From: Bugula neritina
Taxonomy: Eukaryota; Animalia; Bryozoa
DNA: 64,000 bases
NCBI GenBank assembly: GCA_964035545.1
Contig: OZ037771.1
Coordinates: 631,628 to 695,627, forward strand
Reading direction: 5' to 3'
The notes below the pieces were generated by a model. That model was not told the origin of the DNA. It did not search any database and saw only the letters and a program-made list of their open reading frames with translations. Positions 1 to 64,000 of this stretch are shown here, one piece after another. How positions within the stretch are numbered: the stretch's first letter is position 1; the number at the start of each line of letters is the position of its first letter. The position numbers and the translations under genes are program-made.

Positions 1-1526
1 AGGCAGTATGTAGTGTGATGTAGCAGAGGCAGTATGTAGTGCGATGTAATAGAGGCAGTATGTAGTGTGATGTAATAGAGGCAGTATATAGTGTGATGTA
101 ACAGAGGCAGTATGTAGTGTGATGTAGCAGAGGCAGTATGTAGTGTGATGTAACAGAGGCAGTATGTAGTGTGATGTAACAGAGGCAGTATGTAGTGTGA
201 TGTAACAGAGGCAGTATGTAGTGTGATGTAACAGAGGCAGTATGTAGTGTGATGTAATAGAGGCAGTGTGTAGTGTGATGTAACAGAGGCAGTATGTAGT
301 GTGATGTAATAGAGGCAGTATGTAGTGTGATGTAGCAGAGGCAGTATGTAGTGTGATGTAACAGAGGCAGTATGTAGTGTGATGTAGCAGAGGCAGTATG
401 TAGTGTGATGCAATAGAAGCAGTATATAGTGTGATGTAACAGAGGCAGTATGTAGTGTGATGTAATAGAGGCAGTATATAGTGTGATGTAATAAAGGCAG
501 TATGTAGTGTGATGTAGCAGAGGCAGTATGTAGTGTGATGTAACAGAGGCAGTATGTAGTGTGATGTAGCAGAGACAGTATTTAGTGTGATGTAGCAGAG
601 GCAGTATGTAGTGTGATGTAACAGAGGCAGTGTGTAGTGTGATGTAACAGAGGCAGTATTTAGTGTGATGTAACAGAGGCAGTATGTAGTGTGATGTAGC
701 AGAGGCAGTATGTAGTGTGATGTAACAGAGGCAGTATGTAGTGTGATGTAATAGAAGCAGTATGTAGTGTGATGTAATAGAGGCAGTATTTAGTGTGATG
801 TAATAGAGGCAGTATGTAGTGTGATGTAACAGAGGCAGTGTGTAGTGTGATGTAATAGAGGCAGTGTGTAGTGTGATGTAGCAGAGGCAGTATGTAGTGT
901 GATGTAATAGAGGCAGTATGTAGTGTGATGTAACAGAGGCAGTGTGTAGTGTGATGTAATAAAGGCAGTATGTACTGTGATGTAGCAGAGGCAGTATGTA
1001 GTGTGATGTAACAGAGGCAGTATGTAGTGTGATGTAGCAGAGGCAGTATGTAGTGTGATGTAATAGAGGCAGTGTGTAGTGTGATGTAACAGAGGCAGTG
1101 TGTAGTGTGATGTAACAGAGGCAGTATTTAGTGTGATGTAACAGAGGCAGTGTGTAGTGTGATGTAGCAGAGGCAGTATTTAGTGTGATGTAGCAGAGGC
1201 AGTGTGTAGTGTGATGTAATAGAGGCAGTATGTAGTGTGATGTAATAGAGGCAGTATGTAGTGTGATGTAGCAGAGGCAGTATTTAGTGTGATGTAACAG
1301 AGGCAGTATGTAGTGTGATGTAGCAGAGGCAGTATGTAGTGTGATGTAGCAGAGGCAGTATGTAGTGTGATGTAGCAGAGGCAGTATGTAGTGTGATGTA
1401 GCAGAGGCAGTATGTACTGTGATGTAATAGAGGCAGTATTCAGTGTGATGTAATAGAGGCAGTATTTAGTGTGATGTAATAGAGGCAGTATGTAGTGTGA
1501 TGTAATAGAGGCAGTATGTAGTGTGA
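1..1526. repeat. 26-bp minisatellite (AGAGGCAGTATGTAGTGTGATGTAAC), about 58 copies, in a VPS33A intron
   Basis: Direct tandem array that ends about 15 nt from the exon donor at 1541. Confidence 0.97.
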
Positions 1527-1541
1527 CGTCAACAAACTCAC

Positions 1542-27602: not shown

Positions 27603-29675
27603 GGGGAAGGTGGGGTAAGTTGGGTCAAGGGGCAAGTTGGGTCAGGCTATTTTCTCAAAATCTGTAATGCTAGGAAACTGAATAGTTAGGTCAAGAAGTA
27701 AAGGCTAAACTAAAATAACTTCCTACTACTACTACAACACTATCAAAAAAGAGGTGAGTGAAATATTAGCTAATATCAATATTTTTGCTTCATTTGACAT
27801 TCTGTTCACCAAAACAGTAGACCAAAACTTTGTCATTAAGCATGATGATAGAGTGCTGATGTTTTGTGTCATGAATGCTTAAGTAGTTAGCTTATATTTG
27901 GTGGATTATAAAACTTTCTAAATTAATTTGTTCATGCAAAAATTACATGTTTTACAAAATTGCTGCCAATGGGGCAAGTTGGGTCAAAATTTTGGGGCTA
28001 GTTGGGTCAGTGGTCAGTCACTAAACATAGTGTTAATGTAAATTTATTGTTGCAGATCGTGATACTGGATAATCACTGCTCACATATATCCTTAGAGTCT
28101 GTAACTCTTGCTAAAGAATCAGGAGTTGTTTAACCCACCTTGCCACCACATACTTCACACCGATTACAGTCTCTAGATAGAACTGTTTTCGGTCCAATGA
28201 AAACATACTTCAACAAGGCAATGGATAACTTAATGATAACCTATCCGAACAGGAGCATAAAAGTGCAAGACATTGGCGCCCTAACAAAGCGAGCATTTGG
28301 GCAAAACATGACTGTTGCTAATATAACATCGGGCTTTCGTTCATCTGGCATATTCCTATCAAAAGCAGGCATATTTACCGACGCCGACTATGTTCCAATC
28401 GATGTTACGGATAAACCTCAAAGAGTGATCAATGAGCAAGATGATCTAATTCAACTTAGCCAAGCTCATCTCGGCCATCTTTATTCCAGATTCCAATCTA
28501 CAATCCAAGCACGCCTAGTACTTCTGGTTTATTGGCAGGGGGCTACCTCTCAGGATACTTCTACTTCACTGGTGGTGGCTACCTCTAAGCAGCCTATTAC
28601 CCCGCATGATATTCTTCCCTTACCCAAAGCTGCTCTGCACAAAGATGGAGCACCCGGAAGAAAGCGGGTAAAGACCGTTATACTGATGGACACACCAGAG
28701 AAAGAAAGAATCGAACACGAATGAGCAGATAAGTTGAATAAAGTAAAGGAACGACCTAAGCGTAGGCCTATGGCTATACAGAAAGAGCCAGAATCCTGCA
28801 GTGAAGAAGATGAGCAGAACCATATAGTTCCACTAGAGACAGACAGTGATTCACCATCCGAGGCGAAAGCAGAAGAACAGGATGTGACAGATGTAGAAGA
28901 AGGGGTGTTTGTAGTGGCAAAATACAAAGGAAAACGTTCAACCATAGGCTTTGTTGGAATGGTGGTTGGCAAGGATGAAGGAGATTGGAGATTGGACTTT
29001 TACAAAAAGACTCCACAGGGCACATTCTCTAAGCCATCATAGCCAAACATTTATGCAGTGGAGGCTGAGCAAATTGTTAGAGTGCTGGGGGCACCTGTCT
29101 CAACTGGAACAACTGTTCTAACTATAGGCTGTGTTAGTTTGGGCAACAAACTAGATGGCATGGGCATTGAGTCGAGTTAGTTTTCTTGATGCCTTTATTA
29201 AATAAAAATAATAGCCCCAAGCAGATTTGGTTTACTTCTTCGTCCATTCCCAGAGTCTAAACTCAAATAATCTCACTAACTTAAATGATGACTGGGGGCC
29301 TATGTTACAAACTTTGTATGTTTTTCTCAAACTAATATGCCGTTAATCATTACTCAGACCTAATGAACATTAATAAACTGAATTTATTTCAGTGATATGT
29401 TAGATGCCATAGTAATGAAATAGCGACCCAACTTGCCCCATTTGTTTTTGGTGGTGACCCAACTTACCCCTCATGCGGGGTAAGTTGGGTCAGAAGAAAG
29501 GTTTTACGGTATTATCTGTAGCTGACTAAATGTTGGTGTTGCCTCAAAATAAAATTGGGCTATTGTAGGTAACATGTTAATCTATCTTTATGACAAACAG
29601 TTTGATATTTACATGCTTAGATTGGCCACAATATTAAAAAAACCAATTTTTGACCCAACTTACCCCGCCTTCCCC
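27603..29675 (+). mobile_element. pogo/Tigger-type (Tc1/mariner superfamily) DNA transposon, internally deleted
   Basis: 26-bp TIRs GGGGAAGGYGGGGTAAGTTGGGTCAA (1 mismatch), TA on both sides, subterminal GGGGCAAGTTGGGTCA repeats and a DDE_1-type transposase remnant. Confidence 0.92.
28056..29180 (+). pseudogene. Disrupted pogo-family DDE transposase (C-terminal half)
   Basis: IVILDNHCSHIS...LPPHTSHRLQSLDRTVFGPMK...NITSGFRSSGIF, with in-frame stops near 28131, 28722 and 29040. The N-terminal HTH region is missing. Confidence 0.85.
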
Positions 29676-29881: not shown

Positions 29882-32629
29882 ATGTCTGCTGCACATTTGG
29901 AAGGAAGATCTCGCACTGTCTGTGCATTGGGCAAGCAACCTGCTCTTAGCAAGTGTAGCACTGCTCAGGGGCAGAGTATGAGTTTAATAGAGGAGGGGAA
30001 GAGAGCTGCTGCTCATGCTGCTGTTGACAGCGTTGTCAAGGTTGGAAACTTGAGTATAACAGAGTAGAACACAGTGAAATATGTCACAGAGTTAACGTAA
30101 GATCATTAGTGTAGTACACAGCAGGAATTACATGTAGAATTATTGTTGTGAGGTGGTGTGTTGTAGGATAACCAGAGAATTGGCGTCGGATCTGGCTCAA
30201 CCATTGTTTATGCTGTTCAGCGGATTTGTGAGTCACCATTTCACTGTTAGTATGATTGTTTTCTAGTTGATGCTGTGATCCTACAACACACTGCATTGTA
30301 GTATTTCATGTGTTGTTATAGCTGAGCGAGTCAAGGAAGAAAATCTGAAGTTAGTCTGTGTTCCAACTTCTTTCCAAGCAACTCAGCTAATTCAACAACA
30401 CAACCTGGTTTTAAGTGATCTCAACACTACTCCGCAGGTAAATAGTCTGGGTATTCTATACTCCGCAGGTAAATAGTCTGAGTAGTACTTATCCTTGTAG
30501 TTGGACATTGCTATAGATTAGTACAAATATTTTATTACACTTGAAGTTAGGCATTGCTATAGATTATTACATATTTTCTATCATCCTTGTAGTTAGACAT
30601 TGCTATAGACGGGGCTGATGAAGTTGATTCTAACCTAGATGCTATTAAAGGTGGAGGTGGCTGTCAGACACAAGAAAAGGCTGTTGCTGCCGCTGCTGAT
30701 AGTCTCTATCTAATAGCAGACTTTAGGTACATAATCTAGTTTCCTGTACCACATATCCCAACACTGTACTACTGAGTCTTAGGTTATGTTGTATTCATTC
30801 AGCTCAACACAAGATGTGATATTTGAATTTATATGAATTTTGCAGTCGATCTTTTTATATTATCGATTTTATTATAGTCAAGGTGTTGGTATAAATAATA
30901 TAGTTAATTTAGAACTTATTACTCTAGAATTTTAATGCTGGTATAATTGCTAGGAAAGACTCCAAGAAACTGGGAGAGAAATGGAAGAGAGGCGTGCCCA
31001 TAGAGGTGCTGCCGTTCACATATAGGACGGTGCAGAGCAAGATTGAGACGCTGCTGGGTGGGTCAGCTCAGCTCAGAATGGCAAAGCATAAAGCAGTAGG
31101 TGGAATATTGTTAGCTGCGGCTTTTCCTGTTGCTATGCTATAGTATAGTACCTGCTAGCATACTATAGTATAGTATGCTAGCATACTATAGTATAGTACC
31201 TGCTAGTATGCTATAGTATAGTACGTGCTAGCATGCCATAGTATAGTACCTGCTAGCATACTATAGTATAGTACGTGCTAGCATGCTATAGTATAGTACC
31301 TGCTAGCATACTATAGTATAGTACCTGCTAGCATGCTATAGTATAGTACGTGCTAGCATGCTATAGTATAGTACCTGCTAGCATGCCATAGTATAGTACG
31401 TGCTAGCATACTATAGTATAGTATGCTAGCATACTATAGTATAGTACCTGCTAGTATGCTATAGTATAGTACGTGCTAGCATGCCATAGTATAGTACCTG
31501 CTAGCATACTATAGTATAGTACGTGCTAGCATGCTATAGTATAGTACCTGCTAGCATACTATAGTATAGTACCTGCTAGCATGCTATAGTATAGTACGTG
31601 CTAGCATGCTATAGTATAGTACCTGCTAGCATGCTATAGTATAGTACCTGCTAGCATGCTATAGTATAGTACCTGTTATTATACTATATTATAGTAACAG
31701 GTGCTATATTTGACTACTTATATACATGTCGCTTGTATTTTAGTATAACCGTTATATAATTTGTTAAGCTACCGCACTGCTAAAATACACGCTCTGTTAA
31801 TGTATATCTATATAGTGTGCGAGAGTATCACTGTGTAGTGTGCTAGAGTATCACTGTGTAGTGTGCTAGAGTATCACTGTGTAGTGTGCTAGAGTATAAC
31901 TATATAGTGTGCTAGAGTATCACTGTGTAGTGTGCTAGAGTATAACTATATAGTGTGCTAGAGTATCACTGTATAGTGTGCTAGAGTATCACTGTATAGT
32001 GTGCTAGAGTATCACTGTGTAGTGTGCTAGAGTATCACTGTGTAGTGTGCTAGAGTATCACTGTGTAGTGTGCTAGAGTATACCTATGTAGTGTGCTAGA
32101 GTATCACTATGTAGTGTGCTAGAGTATACCTATATAGTGTGCTAGAGTATCACTGTGTAGTGTGCTAGAGTATCACTATGTAGTGTGCTAGAGTATCACT
32201 GTGTAGTGTGCTAGAGTATCACTGTGTAGTGTGCTAGAGTATGGGTTACAGCTGTGTCGTACTACTTAATACAGGGCCCTGTTATCACTGACAATGGCAA
32301 CTTCATACTTGACTGGATATTTGATGTGGACGCTGACGATTGGAATGCTGTCAATACTCAGCTCAAGTTGATCCCTGGTAAGTAAATGTCTCCACTACCT
32401 TTGCTCTGATACACACTGTCTAGATCACCTGATACACACTGTCTAGATCACCTGGTACTCTGTCTAGATCACCTGGTACACTGTCTAGATCACCTGGTAC
32501 ACTGTCTAGATCACCTGATACAATTATTATTTAGGTGTGGTAGAGACGGGGCTATTCTGTGGTATGGCCCGTACAGTCTACTTTGGACTTGAAGACGGAT
32601 CTGTAAAGGTGGTGGAGAGAGATGACTAG
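29882..32629 (+). CDS. RPIA: Ribose-5-phosphate isomerase A
   Basis: Exons 29882-30040, 30167-30227, 30322-30437, 30593-30726, 30954-31095, 32275-32377 and 32535-32629. Motifs [46 protein letters not shown]. The true start may lie upstream (27345). Confidence 0.96.
31135..31675. repeat. 25-bp minisatellite with palindromic cores (ATAGTATAGTACCTGCTAGCATGCT)
   Basis: Tandem array in an RPIA intron. Confidence 0.95.
31812..32241. repeat. About 23-bp minisatellite (TAGTGTGCTAGAGTATCACTGTG)
   Basis: Tandem array in an RPIA intron. Confidence 0.95.
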
Positions 32630-36600: not shown

Positions 36601-39600
36601 GCATGTACACTATACTTACACTGTATACACACTCTAAATATACACTCTATACATGTAAGTGAAACAGTTATACGATTACATGGTATATATACGATACACA
36701 TAGTATATTATACAATTACATGGTATATATAAGATACACATAGTATATTATACGATTACATGTGTACTACATGAACTATAGATAGTACATTACTCACCAC
36801 TATAAACCCCAGTTTCCTCTCAATATTGTCCGACACACTTTCTATTACACCAGATGGGTTAGTAGTGACTGTAGAGCAGTCCATTGCCTGTCAACCATAA
36901 TACTATATTATACATAGTACACAGTATACACTACACGGTATACACTACACAGTATACACTACACAGTACACACTACCCAGTATACACTACACAGTACACA
37001 CTACCCAGTATACACTACACACTACACAGTATACACTACACAGTATACACTACACAGCATAAACTACACAGTATACACTACACAGTACACACTACACAGT
37101 ACACACTACACAGTATACACTACACAGTATACACTACACAGTACACACTACACAGTACACACTACACAGTATACACTACACAGTATACACTACACAGTAT
37201 ACACTACACAGTATACACTACACAGTACACACTACACAGTACACACTACACAGTATACACTACACAGTATACACTACACAGTATACACTACAGAGTACAC
37301 ACTACACAGTATACACTACACAGTATACACTACACAGTATAAACTACACAGTATACACTACAGAGTACACACTACACAGTATACACTGTACAGTATACAC
37401 TACACAGTATACACTACACAGTATACACTACACAGTATACACTACAGAGTACACACTACACAGTACACACTACACAGTATACACTACACAGTATACACTA
37501 CACAGTATACACTACACAGTATACACTACACAGTATACACTACAGAGTACACACTACACAGTATACACTACACAGTATACACTACACAGTATACACTATA
37601 CAGTATACACTACAGAGTATACACTATACAGTATACACTACAGAGTATACATTACACAGTATACACTACACAGTATACACTACAGAGTACACACTACACA
37701 GTATACACTACACAGTATACACTACACAGTACACACTACACAGTATACAATATACAGTATACACTACACAGTACACACTACAGAGTACACACTGATCTCT
37801 AACCAAATATTGAAACACACTGACCTCTAAGAGAAGATAAGTAAACTCGTCTGCAGAGAGAAATGAAGGCTTCCAGCTGTATGATATGTTTTCTTTGAGA
37901 GCAGATTCTGTCTCTGTAATGTAAGAGACTATCAACTAATATACTCTGTGTTATACATAACTATACATGTATACATCATATACTATACTTCTCATCATAT
38001 ACTATACATGTATACTCTGTACATATACTATACAGGTGTGTAGCTATACACGTATACTCTGTACACAGAAGTAACAAGTTTCAAAAATCCATAAACATAG
38101 AAAGTAAGATCGAAAGTGTTGAGCTGCTAGAAGTAGAGCCCATCTGAGTCTGTACACTTGACGGAACTAGACCCCATCCAGCAGACGAGAGAGGAGATTC
38201 GCCAGCAACTCTCTCCCGGATATTGCAGCTTATTGAATGCCATCGTGTCAAAGGAGATGTCAAATTCCACACAGACTAATCACAAACAACACGGCTCTCC
38301 CTTCATGGTGAATGAAACAATTTCATAATTTGCTGATAGAGAATTAATGCAACATAATTATAGGATATACAAACTAAGTCATCCTTGTATTATAGTTATA
38401 CAAATATAAAACCATAGCCATTGCTGAGTAGAAGAAGCTGTGTGTATAGCAATTCTAGAACATGAGAAGAAAACTGCTTATATCAACTATTTACTACCGA
38501 GTAAATATGGAGTGAGGCTTCAATATGCAGAATTGCGTATAAAATGTTGGCAGTTTGTTGAGTCATTTGCTAAATAATATCTAAATTTCATCGCCAGTAT
38601 ATCTGCTGTATTTCAAGACTTACTTTTATACACCTAATGAAAGTACAATAGGGTAAAAATCTTTTCCTCCGCTATTCAGTTCAGTTTGACATACAAAGTT
38701 TGCACCTCTATTTTATTATTGGGAGATGACTTTAAAACTAGTAAAAACTAACCCTTTGAAAATTCAAAATATTAAACTCGAAGTCTTTATTAGGGTTGAA
38801 ATAAAAATAAAATATGATTTCCCTGGTGCAAATTACCATACTTCCCACAGTGGTTGCTAGACTTTACTTTTATAATTTTCAAGGAAAGATACGAAACTAC
38901 GCCATGAAACATGTAACATTTTATTTATCTTCAAAGATCTCAGGGTATAACATGTTCACATCTGACTAGTAAAGACTAGATTGTACTTGGAGACAGACAG
39001 AAGAGTTCTACTATTATTAGAAAACAGGCGAGTCGTGCAGTTCATAGCTAGGAATTCGTGAGAGCTTCATGAATTGTCACGCTTCTGTAATTCACAGTTT
39101 GGTATTTTTTTCACTTGCAGTCGTGCAACAATAGAAGGTAATATGGAAATGCAGTGTAATGACAAGCAGTGATTTATTGTTTTCACTATACTGGAACTTG
39201 CCAATTGGATATTTACACGCGCGCACGAGCTGCAGTGGAAAGATGTATTGATTCGCGAAGAACATTCACCAGTGGCGTATTGCTCAACGTGTATAATTTG
39301 AGTTAACTTTTATTCACACTGACCTTTCTAGATCTACAAAGTTGACTTCATAAGTAAATTTGCATATTAATTATCAATTTTAGAAATGATACTTTTTTCC
39401 AATGCTGCGCGGATGATGCAGGTGCTGAGGTTTCATTAAACCCATTTGCATAGAGTCGAAGAGATCTGTTTTCACTCTGTATAATTATAGCATTGCAGCT
39501 TTTCTATTCACAGTTAGACCATAAAATACTGAAGTTGCGACATAAATACAGCTTACTAAATTTAACCGATGACGTCTTCGGGGAAGGATTGACGACAGTG

Positions 39601-44710: not shown

Positions 44711-45674
44711 ATACTGATACAGCATGAGGGTGACCCTGACTATGAGTGACACTGACATAATCATGACTAATTAGCATACTGCATAGCCAATCACCAATGC
44801 CCATACTGATAGTAATGATAGTGATACTCATAGCTCATAAGTCATAGGCATAGTGATACTGATAGGCGATAGCCGATAGGCATAGCCATTATCAACATCA
44901 TTATGATTATCATTACCTTTATGATTAGTATTACCATATAAAAGTCTAAGACTAATGACAATGTGAATGTCAAACTCGCACTCAACCAGTCAAACTCAAT
45001 CAGTCATGCTCATGGCTCATAAGTCACACGATTAGGTGAGAGCCCGCTGGTGGGTCAGACTGAATTTGCAACTATAGCACTAAAGCACCAATATCAATAT
45101 CAATTAAAATGACCCACTAATTATATCACTATCAGAATATTGCTAATATCACATTTATTTTTACTATGAGTATAACATTAATCGTGTACCTGAACTTGAA
45201 GTCAGCCTAGTATTGGCAAACTTGCAAAGTAGTAAATAAGTGAGGAGATAACTTTAATCTTCTAATTTATGTTTAGTTTTAGTACTTTCTGTTCTTTCGG
45301 TCACCACCCGCACTCGATTGTTAATAAGCTGCAAGAAGATTTGTCTATCCACTGTTACATTCTTCGATTTCCGTAATACACTATAGTTTCATGCAGTGTG
45401 GTATATTTAAGAGTGTTGACTTTAAACCATGAAAAATCATTATGTCGCTAATGGTACCGCAAGTTTATATAAGTTATAAAGGAAAAATTTTGCCACTTTT
45501 GTGATTTTATTTTTTTTTTATATTATGTGTCCATTTTTTTTAGTTTTGTTTATTGGTAAAGTTTTTAAACATATTTTCAATACATATAAAATTTTAAAAA
45601 AAATTAAAACTTAATCGTGCACGTAAATACAAAGCTATAAAGTTTAAGCTTCGCTGTGATTACAATGTGAATAT

Positions 45675-45979
45675 TGTGGTGGCTCGTGGAGCTACCAGCA
45701 ACACAATACGCAAGGTTGCGTATTGACCCGGAACAATGTATTAGCCAATTAGCTAAGCTGTTTTATAAGTAATAGTAGCCGCTTCGCGCTACTAGCTCAG
45801 TTGAGGATAGTGCTGTAAACTAAATAGACGTGCGTATCATTACTGTTGTACATTGGACTTTTATTATGTATTCTTGTATTAAATATAACGATATCTACTC
45901 GACTTAACTGGTGAAGTTTCTCTAGTGATAAATAGACTCTCTTGGTGGCACATCAACCCTAAATCTGAAAATTATAACA
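45675..45979 (+). repeat. 5' LTR (305 bp)
   Basis: TGTGGTGGCTC...ATTATAACA; no difference from the 3' LTR seen by eye. Confidence 0.97.
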
Positions 45980-45980
45980 G

Positions 45981-45998
45981 TGGTGGCAGCGGTGGGAT
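45981..45998 (+). promoter_or_regulatory. Primer-binding site complementary to the 3' end of tRNA-Leu
   Basis: TGGTGGCAGCGGTGGGAT is the reverse complement of ATCCCACCGCTGCCACCA, the animal tRNA-Leu(AAG/UAG) end as recalled; it lies 1 nt after the LTR. Confidence 0.85.
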
Positions 45999-46012
45999 AG
46001 TGTATATCAAAG

Positions 46013-46879
46013 ATGGAGACTGAAAACGCTAGAATGCAACCACCCCCAGTAGAAGGTGAGCGTAGAAATGCTGTTAATCCTGTGAATCGTGAAGGAGAAG
46101 AAGCTTATAGACATTGCTTGAAAGCTCCCACCTTTACTGGGTCGGAAGATGTCGAACAATTTATACAAGAATTTAGAGAGGTAATGGAAGTTGCTCAATG
46201 GCCGCATAGAGTGGCCCTCATTCAATTGCGGAGAGCGGTGACGGAGCAAGCCAAGCCGTACGGAGTGGGAACGGACGTAGACGGCATACTGGCTGCGCTG
46301 CGGGCCCGTTTTGGCACCTCCGTCATAGACGCTAGGACCAAGCTGGAGAGATTGTGCCGCACCCCGCGGACCTCGCTGCAAGAACATGCCGCGACGGTGA
46401 AGAAGCTGGCGCAGATTGCATATAGCGATCTGCCAGCACAACACCAAGAGCGTTACACCTATGACGCCTTTGTCCAGTCCCTAAACGACCTGGGCCTAGA
46501 CCATCACCTACGAGCTAAAGGGATAACCAGAATAGAGGATGCCCTGAAGGCTGGAGAAGCTTACCTGTTGGCTACCCAAATGCATCGAGCACAAAGGAAC
46601 CCCCCAGTAGTTGGAGTCAGCGCTGCCAGGGCTACGACAGGCTCCGAAGCCCTCCCGCTGGAAGCCGAAGTGGACCGCATGGTAGAGATGCTGGGATAAT
46701 TGGTAACCATTCTGGCCGGTGCTGGCCCCGGTCAGGCCTTACGGATGCCCCCAACATCTGTGGGGCAGGGCTGGAGTAGCGCTGATCAGGACCAGGGACA
46801 GAAAGGACGACCCCAATACCAGGGGGCGTTAAACTGTCACGGCCCGCGGACACACTTCCTCCCCGCGGGCCGCAACTAA
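46013..46879 (+). CDS. gag: Gag (capsid-like), with an in-frame TAA at 46697-46699 and a second stop at 46877-46879
   Basis: KAPTFTGSEDVEQFIQEF...ALRARFG capsid motifs. The frame stays open for 59 codons after the TAA. Confidence 0.85.
46828..46872 (+). promoter_or_regulatory. Putative -1 ribosomal frameshift cassette
   Basis: G TTA AAC slippery-like site, short spacer, then the 10-bp stem CGGCCCGCGG...CCGCGGGCCG. Pol is in the -1 frame. Confidence 0.75.
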
Positions 46880-49800
46880 AGGAGTATGGTGGAACGCGCC
46901 GTCGTTTGTCCGTACGGACACGGCGGAACATTCCACCCGAGTGGCAGGTACCCCGCAAGACTAGTAGGCCCGCACAACGGCCCAGTACCTTCTCCCTGCC
47001 ACTCGCTAACCGGTTTCACCGGTTACCTCGGGAAGAGGAGCCCGCCACTGAAATGGAGCCGGAAGGCCCAGTGGAGAGGCCCAAACCCCGCCGGCACCAA
47101 CCTCGCCGCCGGAAGCCCCGTAAACCACGGGTGAAACCCCCGCCGTCCTGTCAAACCAGGACAGCACATGCGGGGGGGGTGAAAGTACAACCACATGGAG
47201 AGAGCTATTTCCTACCCGGAAAGGTGGCCGGCAACGCCGTCACTTTCCTGCTCGACTCCGGTTGTACTACCAACCTTCTCAGTCGTAGAGTCTTTGAGGC
47301 ACTGCCCCGCCGGGACAGGGATAGAGTACGACCGTATACTGGGGAACATGGCACCCTGGCAGACGGGTCATGTATCCCCTTTTATGGTATTATCGAGCTC
47401 CCTGGGCGTGTCCGAGATCAGGCTGTACAGGAGACCTTTGTCATAGGTCAACTGGAAGAAGATGCTATCCTCGGAATGCCCTTCTTGAAGCAACACCAGT
47501 GCCGAATAGATTTCAGTAAGTCGGTGGTGCTAATGGGCGGGCGAGAACTCGCCTGTGTGGATAAGTTTGGGCGTCCCCTGGTGGGCGGTGTTCAGGTAGT
47601 TCGGAACTGCACCGTACCCGGACGCTCCAGAGCTACTATCCACTGCCGAGTGAACAGCAACCAGATAGCCAGGCTCGGGGTCGTTGAAAGCGCGCACGAA
47701 AAGATCCAACTCGCCAGTAGTTTAAACCGACTAACTGAGCGAGGGGAGGTCTTAGTGCAGTGCGTCAACCCCTTTACCGAGCCCATTGAGCTCCCAGCTG
47801 GGTCAATGCTGGGCCGGTTCCATTCCGTCCAGGAAGAGGACGTGGGCCCGTCGCTGGGTGACGCGACGGAGGCACCCCCTCGACACCCTATTCAGGGACG
47901 AGGGGCAGTCCCAACACATCTCCGGGAGTTATACGAAACAGCCAGTGGCGGCTGCGCGAGTAACAGAGAACGCCAAGCTATGGCCAAGTTACTACGCGAC
48001 TACGGTGATGTGTTCAGCAGCGGAGAGCATGACGTGGGACTGACTGGAATTGTCAGACACGAAATACCGCTGACTGCAGGGACAGCCCCTGTCCGGCAGC
48101 CCACGCGCAGGCTGGGGCCGGAGAAAGAGAAGGAGGTTAGCCGACAAGTACGGGATCTTCTGGACCGGGGACTGATAGAGCCCGCCCATAGTGCGTGGAG
48201 CTCGCCAGTCGTACTGGTCCGGAAGAAAGACGGCAGTTGGCGGTTCTGTGTGGACTACCGCAAACTCAATAGCGTAACCATACAGGACGCCTACCCTCTA
48301 CCTCGTATTGACGAGTCATTGGACGCCTTAGCCGGCAGCAAGTACTTCAGTACGTTAGACTTGCTAAGCGGCTATTGGCAGGTTCCTCTGAGTCCCGACG
48401 CCCAAGAGAAAGCGGCGTTTATCACACGGGACGGTTTGTGGAAGTGGAAGGTGCTGCCCTTCGGGTTAACCTCCGCCCCAGCCACCTTCCAGAGGCTGAT
48501 GGAACAAGTCCTTAGCGGACTCCATTGGAAGACACTGCTGGTCTACCTCGATGATGTCATCGTAATCTCTCCAGACTTCGAGACACATGTCAGTCGTCTG
48601 CAGGAGGTTTTCGAGAGACTCCGAGGTGCCGGTCTTAAGCTCAAACCTTCCAAGTGCGCTCTGTTGCAGCCGGAGGTCAAGTACCTGGGGCACGTTGTCG
48701 GTCGAAACGGCGTGGCAACGGATCCCGAAAAGGTACGGGCAGTAGAAGACTGGGTCACCCCCCAAGACTTGACCGGACTCCGGGCTTTCTTGGGGCTGGT
48801 AGGGTATTACAGGCAATACATACCAGACTTTGCGGGCATAGCCCAGCCTTTAAACCGGCTTACCGCAAAGGGAGTGACGTGGCAGTGGACCCCAGTCGAA
48901 CAAGAAGCGTTCGACCGCCTCAAGGGCTGCCTCCTAACGGCGCCCATCTTGGCCTACCCAGACCCCACTCTGGAGTACATCCTAGACACGGACGCCAGTG
49001 ACCAGAATGTTGGCGCTGTGCTGTCACAAGTGCAGGAAGGCCGAGAAGTAGTAGTAGCCTACTACAGCAAGTCTCTCTCTCCCGCTGAACGAAATTACTG
49101 CACTACCCGCAAGGAACTGCTGGCAGTAATCAAGTCAGTGAAGCACTTCAGACCATACCTATATGGCAGGAAGTTCCGGCTGCGTACGGATCATGCCTCG
49201 CTGATCTGGTTGTGCAGGAGAGCAGAGCCCTCTAGTCAGGTCGCCCGGTGGCTCGAAATCCTAGCTGAATTCTCGTACCGGATCGAACATCGACCGGGCA
49301 AGAGACACAGCAATGCGGATGGGTTGAGTCGCCGACCTGAAGGAGGTTGCAAACAGTGTCTCAACATCGAGAGGAGGGATGGAGGTCCCCCACGATGCGA
49401 GTTGGAGACGCTGGCTCATCACGGAGCACCGTTTGACTGGGATCAAGGTCAACTCAAGCAGAGAGTTGATGAGTCCCCGGAGGATGTGCAAAACCTCCGC
49501 GCCAACCCTGTACTGGCCGGTAATGTTCGAGAGCTGAAGAAGCTCCAAGAAGAACTGCCTGGAGTCGTGGCAGACATATACCGGGCCAAACGGGAAGGGC
49601 GACGACCCAGCGAGGAACGCATAAGACAGGGATGCGCCGAGTTCCGGCTATACTGTCAGCGTTGGGACTCGCTGCGGATCGGGCAGGATGGGTTGCTAAC
49701 CATCTCTCTAACTGCCAGCGGCAGACACCCGGAAAGGAAGAGGGTAGTCTGCCCCACAGCCATCCGCCGTGAGTTGATTTGGGATACTCACAAGCAGGCC

Positions 49801-51453
49801 CACGCAGGGGTCAAGCGAGTGATATCAAAATTACGACTCCGGTGGTATTGGCCGCAGATGGAGCGTGACGTCCGGCTCAGAGTCAAACAGTGTGAGATCT
49901 GCCAGGCCAGTAAACATAGCCGCCCCCCTGGTGAGGCAGGACGGCGGAGGCTATATGCTGGTAGGCCCTGGCAAGTAGTCGCTGTAGACCTGGTCGGACC
50001 CATGCCCCTGACCCCCAGAGGCAATAATTGGATCCTAGTACTAACCGACCACTTTACTAGGTGGGCGGATGCTCTGGCCATCCCAGATGCATCAGCCCCA
50101 ACAGTGGCCAGGGCGCTAGACCAACATGTATTCTGTTATTTTGGGCTTCCCGAACAGATACACTCTGATCAAGGCGCTCAATTCCAGTCTCAACTGATGA
50201 GCGACCTTTGCCACCTCTGGGGAGTAAATCAGAGCAGGACCACCCCCTACCACCCTCAAGGTAACGGGGTGGTGGAGCGCAACAACCGGATGCTAGGTGA
50301 TGCGCTCCGGAGTCTCCTCCTTGGACGAGGTCAAGAGGAATGGGATACGGTGTTGCCGCAGGTCATGCGTGCATACCGTAGCACCCCACACACCAGTACT
50401 GGTGAGACCCCAAACCTCTTGATGCTCGGGAGAGAGACTCGTGTCCCTGACCATCTCACCTATCACGTTCCAGAGCAAGACAACTCGGTTCACGAGTATG
50501 CCAGTGAACTAGTGGAACGGATGAAGGCCGCACACGATATACTGCGTCAACAGCAGTGGAAGGTGCGGCACGAAGATTCCGATGAACCCCCTCTCTATCA
50601 AAGGGGAGATAAGGTGTGGATGGTCAATTACCGTAGGCGCCGCGGACAGGCTGATAAGCTGAAGCCTAAGTTCGTAGGCCCCTACGTGGTCGTCGAGGCT
50701 ATGCCCAATCATACGTACAAGATTGAGCGCTCAGGACAGGTGTCTATCCAGAATGAGTCTCGCTTGAAACCGTATTGGGCTAGCCCTGACGGAGTGGGAG
50801 AAGCCCCCCCGTTGTTAGAGCCCAGGAGGCAGACAACGACGCGCGGGCGACGGCGGCATGGGCCTGAATACGAAGTGGTCATACCGCGGGAGGAAAACTT
50901 GGTGAGAGAGGAGCGGCAGCTTTTGTCAACAGAAGCGTGTCCGCCGCCGCCAAGTCTAATTCCATCACTTCCAGAAACCGAGCCGGTTCCGGAAGTGCAA
51001 ACCCCCACGGAGGGAGGGGCTCCATCCGGAGAACAAGAAGAGGTGACCACTAACGGTGAAGTAGAGACGCCATTAGAGGCCCCTACTAACGAACCGGCAA
51101 GCGTGTCACCCCCCCTAGAAAGGGGACAGCGTACGAGGAAGCCCCCACCATATTTAAAAGACTTCATATGTGACTGCATTAGAAGCGGCGCACATGAAAG
51201 TCTAGGGGAAAACCGTACGACAAAATGTTGGAGTTGTGAACCCCACGCAAATATCAACTTTTGCGAGGGCGGAATAGTGGGAGGAATTAATGCGCGTAAA
51301 GCAAATAGTTCCGACCTCGTGCCTCAGAAACGCTGCTCAGCCTTTTCTTATGCTGACATCGCTAAAGGCAGACGTATCCCACAACCAGCTCCAACCTTAC
51401 CAAGAACGTTGAGTATGGACATTAATACCGAGTTCCCAGGTAAGCCAGTATAA
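46828..51453 (+). CDS. pol: Pol polyprotein (aspartic protease, RT, RNase H, integrase with GPY/F module)
   Basis: LLDSGC; WRFCVDYRKLN, LPFGL, YLDD; LDTDAS, CTTRKELLA, RTDH; HHCC (HKQAH...CEIC), VAVDL, IHSDQG, GNGVVER; KFVGPY. The ORF is uninterrupted. Confidence 0.97.
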   Translation, partial: VKLSRPADTLPPRGPQLKEYGGTRRRLSVRTRRNIPPEWQVPRKTSRPAQRPSTFSLPLANRFHRLPREEEPATEMEPEGPVERPKPRRHQPRRRKPRKPRVKPPPSCQTRTAHAGGVKVQPHGESYFLPGKVAGNAVTFLLDSGCTTNLLSRRVFEALPRRDRDRVRPYTGEHGTLADGSCIPFYGIIELPGRVRDQAVQETFVIGQLEEDAILGMPFLKQHQCRIDFSKSVVLMGGRELACVDKFGRPLVGGVQVVRNCTVPGRSRATIHCRVNSNQIARLGVVESAHEKIQLASSLNRLTERGEVLVQCVNPFTEPIELPAGSMLGRFHSVQEEDVGPSLGDATEAPPRHPIQGRGAVPTHLRELYETASGGCASNRERQAMAKLLRDYGDVFSSGEHDVGLTGIVRHEIPLTAGTAPVRQPTRRLGPEKEKEVSRQVRDLLDRGLIEPAHSAWSSPVVLVRKKDGSWRFCVDYRKLNSVTIQDAYPLPRIDESLDALAGSKYFSTLDLLSGYWQVPLSPDAQEKAAFITRDGLWKWKVLPFGLTSAPATFQRLMEQVLSGLHWKTLLVYLDDVIVISPDFETHVSRLQEVFERLRGAGLKLKPSKCALLQPEVKYLGHVVGRNGVATDPEKVRAVEDWVTPQDLTGLRAFLGLVGYYRQYIPDFAGIAQPLNRLTAKGVTWQWTPVEQEAFDRLKGCLLTAPILAYPDPTLEYILDTDASDQNVGAVLSQVQEGREVVVAYYSKSLSPAERNYCTTRKELLAVIKSVKHFRPYLYGRKFRLRTDHASLIWLCRRAEPSSQVARWLEILAEFSYRIEHRPGKRHSNADGLSRRPEGGCKQCLNIERRDGGPPRCELETLAHHGAPFDWDQGQLKQRVDESPEDVQNLRANPVLAGNVRELKKLQEELPGVVADIYRAKREGRRPSEERIRQGCAEFRLYCQRWDSLRIGQDGLLTISLTASGRHPERKRVVCPTAIRRELIWDTHKQAHAGVKRVISKLRLRWYWPQMERDVRLRVKQCEICQASKHSRPPGEAGRRRLYAGRPWQVVAVDLVGPMPLTPRGNNWILVLTDHFTRWADALAIPDASAPTVARALDQHVFCYFGLPEQIHSDQGAQFQSQLMSDLCHLWGVNQSRTTPYHPQGNGVVERNNRMLGDALRSLLLGRGQEEWDTVLPQVMRAYRSTPHTSTGETPNLLMLGRETRVPDHLTYHVPEQDNSVHEYASELVERMKAAHDILRQQQWKVRHEDSDEPPLYQRGDKVWMVNYRRRRGQADKLKPKFVGPYVVVEAMPNHTYKIERSGQVSIQNESRLKPYWASPDGVGEAPPLLEPRRQTTTRGRRRHGPEYEVVIPREENLVREERQLLSTEACPPPPSLIPSLPETEPVPEVQTPTEGGAPSGEQEEVTTNGEVETPLEAPTNEPASVSPPLERGQRTRKPPPYLKDFICDCIRSGAHESLGENRTTKCWSCEPHANINFCEGGIVGGINARKANSSDLVPQKRCSAFSYADIAKGRRIPQPAPTLPRTLSMDINTEFPGKPV

Positions 51454-51470
51454 GTCTTGTATTCCTATTC

Positions 51471-52544
51471 ATGGAAACGGGCTCGATGCCAGTAAATTCT
51501 GAACTAATTCAGCAGATTGAATCAGAATTACTGGGAACCACGTTTCATGTGAATGACGATGAAGACACTGTAATGGCCGACGGTCTGTTAGACCTGGAGC
51601 TAGACACTGTTCTTGGTCAGTCCACACATGATTCATCAGTTCCTCGAGTGCATTCCAAAAGCTGTGACTCTCAGGCTAGCAACGGTCGACAGTCACTAGA
51701 ATTATGTTGTAAAGATCCACCGCGATCTAACAATAATTCTACTTTTGTAGACACACTCGCACCCGTCTCTACGGACATGCCTTCTCTAGAGATGGCATGG
51801 GACTCAGAGCCGGCCCCAACAACTCCTACCACCAGGCAATTACCACCCCAGTTGGAAGCAACCTCCAACTGGATTACCCCTGCCACAGAGAGGGAAATCA
51901 GGACCCATCAAGGAGGTGAGAGTAATCGTGAATGCAACCTCTGCCAGCAGCGATTCACAACCCACCGCAGACTAAAGGTGCACTTGCCGCAGCACTACAT
52001 CACCACTTTCTGCCCTTGCGGAGAATATAGCTATAACCGTGATTACCTACTGCGGCACCAACGTACTATGCAGTGCTATCAAGGACGTGTCTATGAAGTA
52101 GACGAATCATCCTATCCTGCCGTTCTCAACGCCATCAAACCACTCATCACTGACTCAGCTCGGCTATCTCGCCTGGAGCAAGGCTTCCCTTCCCCGCGAC
52201 CTATCATCTCTGGAGCCACAGATAAACCTACACAGTCTGCTAACTCTCCACCTCACAGTCCTATACGCATGCCGCATACCTTTCCTCGTGTCGTACTACA
52301 GCGAGTAGACACAAATGCGTATACACTCCCTCCTCCTATTCCATCCTCAGAGCGGAAACGACACAGGCAACCAACTTCCTCTCGCTCGTCCCCCTGGGCC
52401 CGTAACCTACGTGAGGTAGAAGCTAGGGCGCATGACTTGGAGCAAGAAGTCTACAGGCTGGCCCCACGAATACAGGCAGCCTCCAGTGAACTCAAATACT
52501 TACAGGAGTCGATTAAACGCATGAAGCGTGCGGCCCGCAATTAA
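51471..52544 (+). CDS. Retrotransposon ORF3: non-env accessory protein with zinc-finger-like motifs and a C-terminal coiled coil
   Basis: 357-aa intact ORF inside the LTRs. Contains CNLCQQRFTTHRRLKVHLPQH, CPCGEYSYNRDYLLRHQRTMQC and the heptad LREVEARAHDLEQEVYRLAPRIQAASSELKYLQESI. Confidence 0.85.
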   Translation: METGSMPVNSELIQQIESELLGTTFHVNDDEDTVMADGLLDLELDTVLGQSTHDSSVPRVHSKSCDSQASNGRQSLELCCKDPPRSNNNSTFVDTLAPVSTDMPSLEMAWDSEPAPTTPTTRQLPPQLEATSNWITPATEREIRTHQGGESNRECNLCQQRFTTHRRLKVHLPQHYITTFCPCGEYSYNRDYLLRHQRTMQCYQGRVYEVDESSYPAVLNAIKPLITDSARLSRLEQGFPSPRPIISGATDKPTQSANSPPHSPIRMPHTFPRVVLQRVDTNAYTLPPPIPSSERKRHRQPTSSRSSPWARNLREVEARAHDLEQEVYRLAPRIQAASSELKYLQESIKRMKRAARN

Positions 52545-52797
52545 CTCGAGTCTACCTACCACTCCCTACTACTCATTCCCCTACCTCTCTGTGGCATTCC
52601 CTACCGTAATGGTGGCACGTACTCTATATGTAGATAGTACCTTCTCTTGCTTATACTTAGTGCACGATATATATACCTGTATATTTTTTTTACCAGTTGT
52701 TGTTTTTTATATATACTCTTATGCTGTTCTCTTATCCCCCAACGAAGTATACGTTTTTTTTGTGAATCTTATTTTATCAGAAAGTGGGCTTTCTGCT

Positions 52798-52808
52798 GGA
52801 GGGGGCAG
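52798..52808 (+). promoter_or_regulatory. Polypurine tract
   Basis: GGAGGGGGCAG abutting the 3' LTR. Confidence 0.8.
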
Positions 52809-53113
52809 TGTGGTGGCTCGTGGAGCTACCAGCAACACAATACGCAAGGTTGCGTATTGACCCGGAACAATGTATTAGCCAATTAGCTAAGCTGTTTTAT
52901 AAGTAATAGTAGCCGCTTCGCGCTACTAGCTCAGTTGAGGATAGTGCTGTAAACTAAATAGACGTGCGTATCATTACTGTTGTACATTGGACTTTTATTA
53001 TGTATTCTTGTATTAAATATAACGATATCTACTCGACTTAACTGGTGAAGTTTCTCTAGTGATAAATAGACTCTCTTGGTGGCACATCAACCCTAAATCT
53101 GAAAATTATAACA
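52809..53113 (+). repeat. 3' LTR (305 bp)
   Basis: Same sequence as the 5' LTR. Confidence 0.97.
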
Positions 53114-53264
53114 ATATGAATTGAATAATGCTTGCAATAACCATTTTACACAAAATACGTTACAATTGCAATAAATGTAAGACTAGTAAATTGGATGCAA
53201 ATAGGCACGGTAATACTATTTAATTTATGCTATTTTTGAAATTTGTAGTAAATATTCGGCATGT

Positions 53265-54232
<968 letters not shown>

Positions 54233-55799: not shown

Positions 55800-64000
<8,201 letters not shown>

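What the first reader, a model, noticed from the sequence alone, without database searches (positions are those of the whole stretch)
51471..52544. Gypsy element carries a transcription-factor-like third gene in place of env
Seen: an intact 357-aa sense ORF starting 17 nt after the pol stop, inside identical LTRs. It has no signal peptide, transmembrane helix or other envelope hallmark. It does have an acidic/hydrophobic N-terminus (DDEDTVMADGLLDLELDTVL), a classical C2H2 finger (C-x2-C-x12-H-x3-H, near 51933) followed by an atypical CxC...H...C finger, a Ser/Pro-rich linker with a basic NLS-like patch (ERKRHR), and a terminal coiled coil/leucine zipper. Known: ORF3 of three-ORF Ty3/Gypsy elements is usually env, although some lineages carry non-env extra ORFs. 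Inference: this is an element-encoded dimeric nucleic-acid-binding regulator (an LTR trans-activator or anti-silencing factor), analogous to the accessory genes of complex retroviruses.
Basis: partly seen in the sequence, partly recalled or inferred. Interest (0 to 1): 0.9.

Follow-up and report, generated by a model that had tools for sequence, protein, structure and literature searches.

The report
Retrotransposon carries a zinc-finger accessory gene
A young Gypsy-type jumping gene in what is most likely a bryozoan genome carries, where an envelope gene would sit, an intact and selectively maintained gene for a zinc-finger, coiled-coil protein that also has cellular relatives in bryozoans; its role is not shown, but it looks like a nucleic-acid-binding helper.

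Summary
ORF3 (51471-52544, 357 aa) is intact and starts 17 nt after the pol stop. It lies inside a 7.4-kb Ty3/Gypsy element with identical 305-nt LTRs, a 4-bp target duplication, and primer-binding and polypurine sites.

It is not an envelope gene: it has no hydrophobic segment and no fusion-protein fold. It has a confidently predicted 125-residue two-zinc domain (one C2H2 finger, one C-x-C...H...C finger), a conserved basic patch and a C-terminal heptad helix.

Relatives occur in Bugula neritina-associated samples. In every informative locus they lie between pol and the 3' LTR. dN/dS is 0.16 overall and about 0.04 in the zinc core and the helix. Two decayed copies still keep ORF3 open.

New here: the zinc core is shared with intron-bearing cellular genes of Bugula and with Watersipora proteins, so host and element exchanged this gene long ago. 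An invariant CAGGTAAGC block at the pol/ORF3 junction suggests a splice or re-initiation signal.

The trans-activator reading is plausible but untested. An RNA-export role like CERV of Cer1, or a host-factor decoy, fit about as well.

Verdict: a real accessory gene and a new variant of the known "additional ORF" kind. Two slips and one left-out step are declared in the report.

The parts
45671..45674 (+). target-site duplication, left copy (ATAT)
   Evidence: The same 4 nt lie at 53114-53117.
45675..45979 (+). 5' LTR (305 nt, TG...CA), with CCAAT-like and TATA-like blocks
   Evidence: 100% identical to the 3' LTR. The blocks are shared with the LTRs of L001 and L002.
45981..45998 (+). primer-binding-site-like stretch starting TGG, one base after the LTR
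   Evidence: Read. Nearly the same stretch follows the 5' LTR of the distant relative in L002.
46013..46699 (+). gag-like ORF (228 aa)
   Evidence: It is the first ORF after the 5' LTR. It is 40-47% identical to the matching region of the L002 element. It has no Pfam hit and no CCHC knuckle.
46786..51453 (+). pol reading frame. It is open from 46786, and the listed ORF is 46906-51453 (1515 aa). Domains: protease about 47215-47493, reverse transcriptase 48217-48696, RNase H 48886-49272, integrase 49753-50727.
   Evidence: Pfam hits: RVT_1 at 5e-37, RT_RNaseH_2 at 5e-36, rve at 1e-15, Integrase_H2C2 at 2e-14, and weak aspartyl protease and SH3_Tf2-1 hits.
51429..51470 (+). pol/ORF3 junction: an invariant AGTTCnCAGGTAAGC block, the pol stop, and a 17-nt spacer. 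Possible splice or re-initiation signal.
   Evidence: The block, the place of the stop and the spacer length are the same in the window, L001, L006 and L008, although their ORF3 proteins are only 50-72% identical.
51471..52544 (+). ORF3, 357 aa plus stop: the accessory gene
51555..51614 (+). acidic, leucine-rich N-terminal block (residues 29-48)
   Evidence: Position. The M-A-D-x-L-L-D-L block is present in 32 of 57 close relatives, many of the rest being N-terminally cut. dN/dS is 0.20 against L001.
51831..52205 (+). two-zinc core domain (residues 121-245). Finger 1 (C2H2) is 51933-51995; finger 2 (C-x-C...H...C) is 52011-52076.
   Evidence: AlphaFold pLDDT is above 90 in the full-length model. 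Modelled alone it gives pLDDT 94.5 and pTM 0.85. W134, H171, H175, C181 and C183 are invariant; C155, C158 and H196 are at least 90% conserved. dN/dS is about 0.04.
52350..52367 (+). basic patch ERKRHR (residues 294-299), NLS-like
   Evidence: Position. A basic cluster sits at this place across the alignment, distant members included.
52392..52538 (+). C-terminal heptad helix (residues 308-356), probable coiled coil
   Evidence: Predicted as one helix with pLDDT 83-96. a/d positions are hydrophobic in 14 of 14 cases. dN/dS is about 0.04.
52798..52808 (+). polypurine-tract-like GGAGGGGGCAG abutting the 3' LTR
   Evidence: The last 38 nt before the LTR are 89% identical in L001.
52809..53113 (+). 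3' LTR
53114..53117 (+). target-site duplication, right copy (ATAT)

Best explanation
Shown:
- ORF3 is a real accessory gene of a lineage of Ty3/Gypsy LTR retrotransposons, most likely of bryozoans.
- It is kept by selection, and its place between pol and the 3' LTR is fixed.
- It is not an envelope gene.
- Its core is a compact domain with two zinc sites.
- The same core is found in cellular, intron-bearing bryozoan genes.

Inferred:
- The gene was exchanged between host and element long ago. The direction is open.
- The protein enters the nucleus by its conserved basic patch and oligomerises through its C-terminal coiled coil.
- It binds nucleic acid with the zinc core. The most likely target is the element's own DNA or transcript, and the effect is to raise or secure the element's expression.
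- It is probably made from a subgenomic message that uses the invariant CAG|G signal at the pol/ORF3 junction. The alternative is re-initiation after the pol stop 17 nt upstream.

The 0.45 confidence below is for this functional reading. That ORF3 is a selected, non-env element gene I hold at about 0.9.
For: The element is young and complete:
- Identical LTRs, target duplication, PBS, PPT, and PR-RT-RH-IN in one open 1515-codon frame.

The gene order is conserved:
- It is the same in L001, L002-L005 and L006/L007, and the junction is conserved in L008.

Selection:
- dN/dS of ORF3, window against L001, is 0.157 overall.
- It is about 0.04 in the zinc core and in the C-terminal helix.
- The zinc ligands are invariant or at least 90% conserved over 36 sequences down to about 20% identity.

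Structure:
- The core is predicted with confidence (pLDDT 94.5, pTM 0.85).
- The C-terminal helix has a perfect a/d pattern.

Nearest sequence and fold neighbours:
- All are DNA-bound tandem C2H2 fingers: ZBTB7A at E 6e-6 by sequence, then SALL, CTCF and Kaiso.

Other support:
- A basic cluster is conserved before the helix.
- The ORF3 protein has no membrane feature.
- ORF3 stays open in two copies whose pol is shattered.
- Cellular paralogues exist in B. neritina. They are multi-exon, arranged in tandem, and have no gag or pol nearby.
- Published precedent: Cer1 of C. elegans encodes CERV, a nuclear non-env protein made from a spliced message (PMC10309623). ORF3s of rotifer LTR elements are usually expressed from spliced messages (PMC5408684).
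Against: - No binding, localisation or expression data exist.
- Pfam zinc-finger scores are below threshold (15.6 against 25.2 bits).
- No fold match reaches E 0.1.
- There are only two fingers, the second is atypical, and both are locked into one domain. That arrangement can equally serve protein or RNA binding.
- The finger-1 helix is conserved across lineages whose LTRs are 77% identical or hardly alignable. This argues for a conserved target that need not be the LTR.
- The splice reading of the junction block is untested. The same block also encodes the conserved end of pol.
- The ORF3 of L006/L007 is truncated.
Confidence: 0.45

Rival explanations
1. Post-transcriptional helper of the Rev/CERV type. 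ORF3 protein binds the unspliced genomic RNA in the nucleus, multimerises on it through the C-terminal helix, and couples it to export or protects it, so that gag and pol can be made.
For: - If ORF3 comes from a spliced message (junction signal), the element has to export an intron-containing RNA.
- CERV of Cer1 does exactly this. It has a dimerisation motif and a basic NLS and lies 3' of pol (PMC10309623).
- ORF3 has a basic patch, an oligomerisation helix and a leucine-rich acidic N-terminal block that fits a loose export-signal pattern.
Against: - No sequence or fold likeness to CERV or to any viral protein came back.
- The last hydrophobic position of the export-like pattern is not conserved in the close relatives.
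- Zinc fingers of this type are more often DNA readers.
Confidence: 0.2
2. Host-factor decoy. ORF3 is an element-borne copy of a cellular bryozoan regulator. It competes with the cellular paralogue, or pairs with it through the coiled coil, and so blunts a host control pathway.
For: - Cellular paralogues share the same core, and P0206 also has a C-terminal heptad-like helix.
- The finger helix is conserved between element and host versions.
- Element and host versions form separate clades.
Against: - Similarity to the cellular genes is limited to the core (34% over 106 residues).
- The function of the host genes is unknown.
- There is no evidence of interaction.
Confidence: 0.12
3. Co-opted gene. 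Some ORF3 copies now serve the host and are kept open after their element has died. The ORF in active elements is merely the source.
For: - The L002 locus has LTRs only 87% identical. Its gag-pol carries 27 in-frame stops and 9 frame changes, yet ORF3 is intact at 330 aa. Poisson P is 0.0003, or about 0.1 on the most cautious count.
- The same protein is seen in four samples.
- L001: pol has 8 stops, 4 frame changes and one inverted piece, yet ORF3 is intact (P 0.075).
Against: - There are only two loci, and the counts from low-identity alignments are rough.
- This does not explain the strong constraint on ORF3 in young, complete elements such as the one in the window.
- It is not exclusive of the other readings.
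Confidence: 0.1
4. Passenger. A host gene fragment was picked up recently and has no role for the element.
For: The core is shared with cellular genes.
Against: - ORF3 is in the same place in element lineages whose ORF3 proteins are 72%, about 50% and 34% identical.
- dN/dS is 0.04-0.16.
- The junction signal is invariant.
- There are no introns and no host flanks.
Confidence: 0.04
5. A divergent envelope or fusogen.
For: Only its position 3' of pol.
Against: - No signal peptide and no hydrophobic segment (highest 19-residue hydropathy mean 0.56).
- Only two adjacent sequons.
- No fusion-protein fold in the PDB or in the viral structure library.
- Bryozoan env-carrying Gypsy elements described so far have a herpesvirus gB-type env placed between gag and pol (PMC13524379).
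Confidence: 0.01

Closest known systems
CERV of the Cer1 Ty3/Gypsy element of Caenorhabditis elegans (PMC10309623)
   Same: Both are non-env proteins encoded largely 3' of pol in an animal Gypsy-type element. Both have a dimerisation-type helix and a short basic nuclear-localisation-type patch. CERV is nuclear and is needed for the element's own expression. Its coding region was also first taken for env.
   Different: No sequence or fold similarity was found. CERV is 517 aa, comes from five exons that share frames with gag and pol, and has no zinc fingers. ORF3 here is one free-standing frame with a two-zinc core.
Additional ORFs of LTR retrotransposons: rotifer ORF3 types GDSL, DEDDy, coiled-coil and TM (PMC5408684); plant aORFs (PMC7264820, PMC11963269); orchid demethylase domain (PMC9289625)
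   Same: The principle is the same: the slot between pol and the 3' LTR is modular and takes up non-env genes, some of them from cellular sources.
   Different: None of the described types is a C2H2-type zinc-finger protein. A literature search for one found none. Here cellular paralogues exist in the same phylum.
Tandem C2H2 zinc-finger DNA-binding proteins (ZBTB7A, SALL4, CTCF, Kaiso)
   Same: Finger 1 has the C-x2-C-x12-H-x3-H spacing with the usual hydrophobic positions. Residues 140-199 align to two ZBTB7A fingers at E 6e-6. These proteins are also the best, though weak, fold matches.
   Different: There are only two fingers and no TGEKP-type linker. Finger 2 is C-x-C...H-x5-C. Both fingers are embedded with four extra helices and a strand in one rigid domain. 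The match is below the Pfam threshold, with TM-scores of 0.3-0.4 and rmsd of 7 A or more.
   Same: A small nuclear-type regulator encoded 3' of pol in addition to gag and pol. The likeness is in genome logic only.
   Different: No relative of any of them came back from the protein, PDB or viral-structure searches.
Cellular bryozoan genes KAF6040922.1 and KAF6040923.1 (Bugula neritina) and XP_067944745.1 (Watersipora subatra), all unnamed
   Same: They share the whole zinc core: W...T...I, the C2H2 finger, the C-x-C finger and the Y-E-V-D strand. Similarity is 34% over 106 residues at E 3e-16, with domain E-values to 6e-33. P0206 also ends in a heptad-like helix.
   Different: They are multi-exon genes in AT-rich host DNA with no gag or pol nearby. 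They have their own N-terminal motif, shared between the two genera. They lack the N-terminal block, the V-V-L-Q-R block and the junction of ORF3.

Membership tests
Ty3/Gypsy (Metaviridae-type) LTR retrotransposon | Direct LTRs ending TG...CA, a short target duplication, a PBS after the 5' LTR and a PPT before the 3' LTR | tested here: met
Ty3/Gypsy (Metaviridae-type) LTR retrotransposon | pol domain order protease - reverse transcriptase - RNase H - integrase, with Gypsy-type domains | tested here: met
   RVT_1, RT_RNaseH_2, Integrase_H2C2, rve and SH3_Tf2-1 occur in that order. No Bel/Pao or Copia models were hit.
Ty3/Gypsy (Metaviridae-type) LTR retrotransposon | A recognisable gag with capsid and nucleocapsid domains, joined to pol by overlap or read-through | tested here: inconclusive
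   The first ORF is gag-like by position and is conserved in L002. It has no Pfam hit and no CCHC knuckle, and it does not overlap the pol frame.
Envelope glycoprotein of errantiviruses and retroviruses | Signal peptide, transmembrane anchor and fusion peptide | tested here: not met
   The highest 19-residue hydropathy mean is 0.56, and the N-terminus is hydrophilic.
Envelope glycoprotein of errantiviruses and retroviruses | Class I, II or III fusion-protein fold | tested here: not met
   No such match in the PDB or BFVD. The model is a small zinc domain plus one long helix, and the rest is disordered.
Classical C2H2 zinc-finger transcription factors | C-x2-4-C-x12-H-x3-5-H finger | tested here: met
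   Finger 1 is C155, C158, H171, H175, and the ligands are conserved.
Classical C2H2 zinc-finger transcription factors | Score above the curated family threshold | tested here: not met
   zf-C2H2 scores 15.6 bits against a cut-off of 25.2. Only 4-5 of 36 relatives reach E 0.01.
Classical C2H2 zinc-finger transcription factors | An array of independent fingers joined by conserved linkers | tested here: not met
   Two fingers, the second being C-x-C...H...C. The linker is Y-I-T-T-F. Both are fixed in one domain with pTM 0.85.
Classical C2H2 zinc-finger transcription factors | Sequence-specific DNA binding | not testable with these tools
   This needs binding or occupancy data.
bZIP / leucine-zipper factors | Heptad repeat of hydrophobic residues in a long helix | tested here: met
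   14 of 14 a/d positions are hydrophobic in residues 308-356.
bZIP / leucine-zipper factors | A basic DNA-binding region continuous with the zipper, and a family model hit | tested here: not met
   No bZIP model is hit. The basic patch (residues 294-299) lies before the helix, in a segment predicted as disordered.
Accessory regulators of retroelements (CERV; retroviral trans-activators and export factors) | Homology in sequence or fold | tested here: not met
   No named hit.
Accessory regulators of retroelements (CERV; retroviral trans-activators and export factors) | Made from a spliced subgenomic message | not testable with these tools
   There is only a conserved splice-like block at the junction and a donor-like site early in gag. 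No RNA data were available.
Accessory regulators of retroelements (CERV; retroviral trans-activators and export factors) | Needed for expression of the element | not testable with these tools
   A functional test, outside this report.
Bryozoan cellular two-zinc-core gene family (unnamed) | The approximately 125-residue core with W, C2H2, C-x-C...H and the Y-x-V-D strand | tested here: met
Bryozoan cellular two-zinc-core gene family (unnamed) | Multi-exon cellular gene with the family's own N-terminal motif | tested here: not met
   ORF3 is one uninterrupted frame inside an element and lacks that motif.

The most novel reading that the evidence does not exclude
A retrotransposon lineage carries its own version of a host zinc-finger regulator and uses it against the host's control of the element, as a decoy or as a dominant partner of the cellular paralogues. 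The host in turn keeps some element-borne copies alive after the element has decayed. That would be a two-way traffic of one regulator family between genome and parasite, in a phylum where almost nothing is known about transposon control.
Probability: 0.1. Interest if true: 0.85.

Novelty: new variant of a known kind. Interest (0 to 1): 0.55.

Why it matters
Extra genes in LTR retrotransposons are the raw material from which retroviruses gained envelope and regulatory genes, and few animal cases other than env have been described.

This case offers three things:
- a well-conserved, strongly constrained zinc-finger/coiled-coil ORF3;
- a confident structural model of a domain with no solved counterpart;
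- clear cellular paralogues in the same phylum.

It therefore gives a concrete system for asking two questions. How do retroelements acquire regulators from their hosts, or donate them? What does such a regulator do?

It also adds a second kind of three-ORF Gypsy element in bryozoans, beside the gag-env-pol errantiviruses reported for that phylum. It flags an uncharacterised bryozoan gene family as well.

Tried and rejected
Searches that gave no useful answer:
- Pfam on ORF3 and on 36 relatives found nothing above threshold. Only weak zf-C2H2 hits appeared.
- Sequence and profile searches of the PDB matched only the fingers.
- Foldseek of the full model and of the core alone against the PDB, and of the full model against viral predicted structures, gave nothing below E 0.1.
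- Rfam and tRNA scans of the window found nothing.
- A profile search of the 5.8-billion-protein set returned the same group and did not widen the taxonomic range.

False leads:
- Long ORFs elsewhere in the window looked like host genes. They are mostly read through minisatellite arrays and did not identify the host.
- The second 330-aa gene next to the ORF3 homologue in L002 looked like a tandem duplicate. It is unrelated and lies outside the 3' LTR.
- P0183 (809 aa), a weak hit, is an ordinary array of paired C2H2 fingers and not a family member.
- A first dN/dS run on pol pieces was wrong because the aligner dropped stop symbols. It was redone with X at the stops.

Comparisons that settled nothing:
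- GC and GC3 of the host genes against ORF3 did not decide the direction of transfer.
- The LTR alignment showed only generic promoter-like blocks.

Readings considered and rejected:
- env or fusogen;
- recent passenger fragment;
- BED-type finger (no model hit);
- bZIP.
Full report
**1. The observation**

The window holds one complete LTR retrotransposon at 45675-53113.

- Its LTRs (45675-45979 and 52809-53113) are 305 nt, begin TG, end CA and are identical.
- ATAT flanks both ends.
- A TGG-initiated primer-binding-like stretch follows the 5' LTR, and a purine run abuts the 3' LTR.
- Inside lie three ORFs:
  - a gag-like ORF at 46013-46699 (228 aa, no Pfam hit);
  - a pol frame open from 46786, listed as ORF 46906-51453 (1515 aa, with protease, RT, RNase H and integrase in Gypsy order);
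  - ORF3 at 51471-52544.
- The element has 51-57% G+C in host DNA of about 30-35%.
- It is the only copy in the window.

**2. Whose genome is this?**

- ORF3 has 57 relatives in the large protein set. The best is 72% identical, and a dozen full-length ones are near 50%.
- There are 202 representative clusters in the exhaustive search.
- The relatives that I looked up come from two JGI samples and two sequencing runs. The JGI records carry the prefix AY690838, which is the accession of the Bugula neritina mitochondrial genome (PMC2678162).
- The named distant members are proteins of B. neritina and of Watersipora subatra.

The family is therefore bryozoan as far as the names go, and the window is most likely from a bryozoan related to Bugula. 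The window's own protein is not in the collection.

**3. ORF3 belongs to the element**

ORF3 follows pol wherever the upstream side is present:

- L001 has pol about 90% identical to the window's, and a 3' LTR 77% identical.
- L002-L005 are one locus: a distant element with gag, pol, ORF3 and LTRs 87% identical to each other.
- L006/L007 show the C-terminus of pol followed by ORF3.

The junction itself is conserved at the nucleotide level in the window, L001, L006 and L008:

- an invariant AGTTCnCAGGTAAGC block;
- the pol stop at the same position;
- a 17-nt spacer, then the ATG.

This holds although the proteins on both sides are only about 50-70% identical. I read the block as a signal for making ORF3, either a splice acceptor or a re-initiation context. 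A donor-like AAG|GTGAGC lies in codons 14-15 of the gag-like ORF. I built and searched no joined exon model, and without RNA data the splice reading is inference.

**4. Selection**

- Window against L001: ORF3 has dN 0.149, dS 0.945 and dN/dS 0.157.
- Single-frame pieces of pol, each treated on its own, give dS 0.27-0.41 and dN/dS 0.09-0.19.
- By region:
  - the first 120 codons of ORF3 have dS about 0.3, like pol;
  - the zinc core and the C-terminal helix are saturated at silent sites yet 71-75% identical in protein, with dN/dS about 0.04.

The two elements are therefore mosaics whose 3' parts, including the LTRs, come from more distant lineages. The core and the helix are under strong constraint.

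In a 36-sequence alignment, W134, H171, H175, C181 and C183 are invariant, and C155, C158 and H196 are at least 90% conserved.

**5. ORF3 outlives pol**

| Locus | gag-pol region | ORF3 | Poisson P of no break in ORF3 |
|---|---|---|---|
| L002 | 27 in-frame stops, 9 frame changes | open, 330 aa | 0.0003; about 0.1 if one only counts that no pol ORF exceeds about 140 codons |
| L001 | 8 stops, 4 frame changes, one inverted piece | open, 355 aa | 0.075 |

- The ORF3 of L008 is open over 365 codons.
- The ORF3 of L006/L007 is truncated at 232 aa.

This is suggestive and no more.

**6. The protein**

- AlphaFold with the family alignment gives a compact domain at residues 121-245 (pLDDT above 90), one long helix at 308-356 and disorder elsewhere.
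- The core alone gives pLDDT 94.5 and pTM 0.85.
- The core holds a short N-terminal helix pair around the invariant Trp, a C2H2 finger, a C-x-C...H-x5-C finger, a strand (Y-E-V-D) and two more helices.
- Residues 140-199 resemble two ZBTB7A fingers by sequence (E 6e-6).
- By fold nothing reaches E 0.1. The top of the list is DNA-bound C2H2 arrays at TM 0.3-0.4.
- The viral structure library gives nothing, and Pfam has no family for it.
- The C-terminal helix has hydrophobic residues at all 14 a/d positions.
- A basic cluster precedes the helix throughout the family.

**7. Cellular relatives**

- B. neritina KAF6040922.1 and KAF6040923.1 are neighbours on a 418-kb contig. Both are multi-exon, and no gag or pol similarity lies within 22 kb.
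- They share only the core with ORF3 (34% over 106 residues, E 3e-16).
- They carry an N-terminal motif also present in Watersipora XP_067944745.1.
- Watersipora XP_067940964.1 has two cores (42-44% identical to the window's) and a terminal helix.
- In a neighbour-joining tree of 112 core domains, the element ORF3s form one clade and the host-type genes lie elsewhere. The tree has no support values, and the root is not secure.
- The direction of transfer is open.

**8. Mechanism**

I commit to a nuclear, oligomeric, nucleic-acid-binding helper of the element's expression (0.45). The rivals are:

- an RNA-export helper of the CERV type (0.2);
- a decoy of the cellular paralogues (0.12);
- a co-opted host gene (0.1, not exclusive of the others);
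- a passenger fragment (0.04);
- env (0.01).

I would put that specific claim alone at about 0.2. The finger helix is conserved while the LTRs diverge fast.

**9. Comparison and novelty**

Non-env extra ORFs are known in several places:

- rotifer LTR elements (PMC5408684);
- plants (PMC7264820);
- Cer1 of C. elegans, whose CERV protein is the closest functional analogue (PMC10309623).

Bryozoan Gypsy elements described so far carry a gB-type env between gag and pol (PMC13524379). A search for a C2H2-type ORF3 in LTR retrotransposons found none. I therefore file this as a new variant of a known kind.

Noticed in passing
window 46013-46905: The gag-like ORF is short (228 aa) and has no Pfam hit and no CCHC knuckle. 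It does not overlap the pol frame, which opens 86 nt after the gag stop. How pol is translated is therefore not evident from the sequence.
   Followed up: partly
window 51471-52544 against L001 6601-7668: The divergence is mosaic. The first 120 codons of ORF3 and pol have dS of about 0.3. The rest of ORF3 is saturated at silent sites, and the LTRs are only 77% identical. This points to recombination between element lineages within ORF3.
   Followed up: partly
L002 4182-11557: This is an old element (LTRs 87% identical) whose gag-pol region is shattered. Its 330-aa ORF3 homologue is intact, and the same protein is seen in four samples.
   Followed up: partly
L009 362-14169 (Bugula neritina contig VXIV02000093.1): Two neighbouring multi-exon cellular genes carry the same two-zinc core, one of them twice. 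Their N-terminal motif is shared with a Watersipora protein. This is an uncharacterised bryozoan gene family.
   Followed up: partly
window 1-1534, 8523-9103, 12408-13424, 15134-17158, 31135-32242, 36918-37793, 61221-62686 and others: The window is crowded with unrelated minisatellite arrays (periods 14-44, up to 63 copies). They explain the strong local GC skews and most long 'ORFs' outside the element.
   Followed up: partly
window 53269-54229: A degenerate (TA)n tract of about 1 kb starts 150 nt downstream of the 3' LTR. The element sits in very AT-rich DNA and has duplicated an ATAT target.
   Followed up: no
window 28140-28724 and 17174-17662: There is a weak DDE_1 (pogo-type transposase) fragment and an SH3-domain exon-like ORF. 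These are the only protein-domain traces outside the element.
   Followed up: no
window 45981-45998 and L002 about 4583-4602: The same primer-binding-like sequence occurs in two elements whose pol proteins are only 50-60% identical. The lineage appears to keep one primer tRNA, which I did not identify.
   Followed up: no
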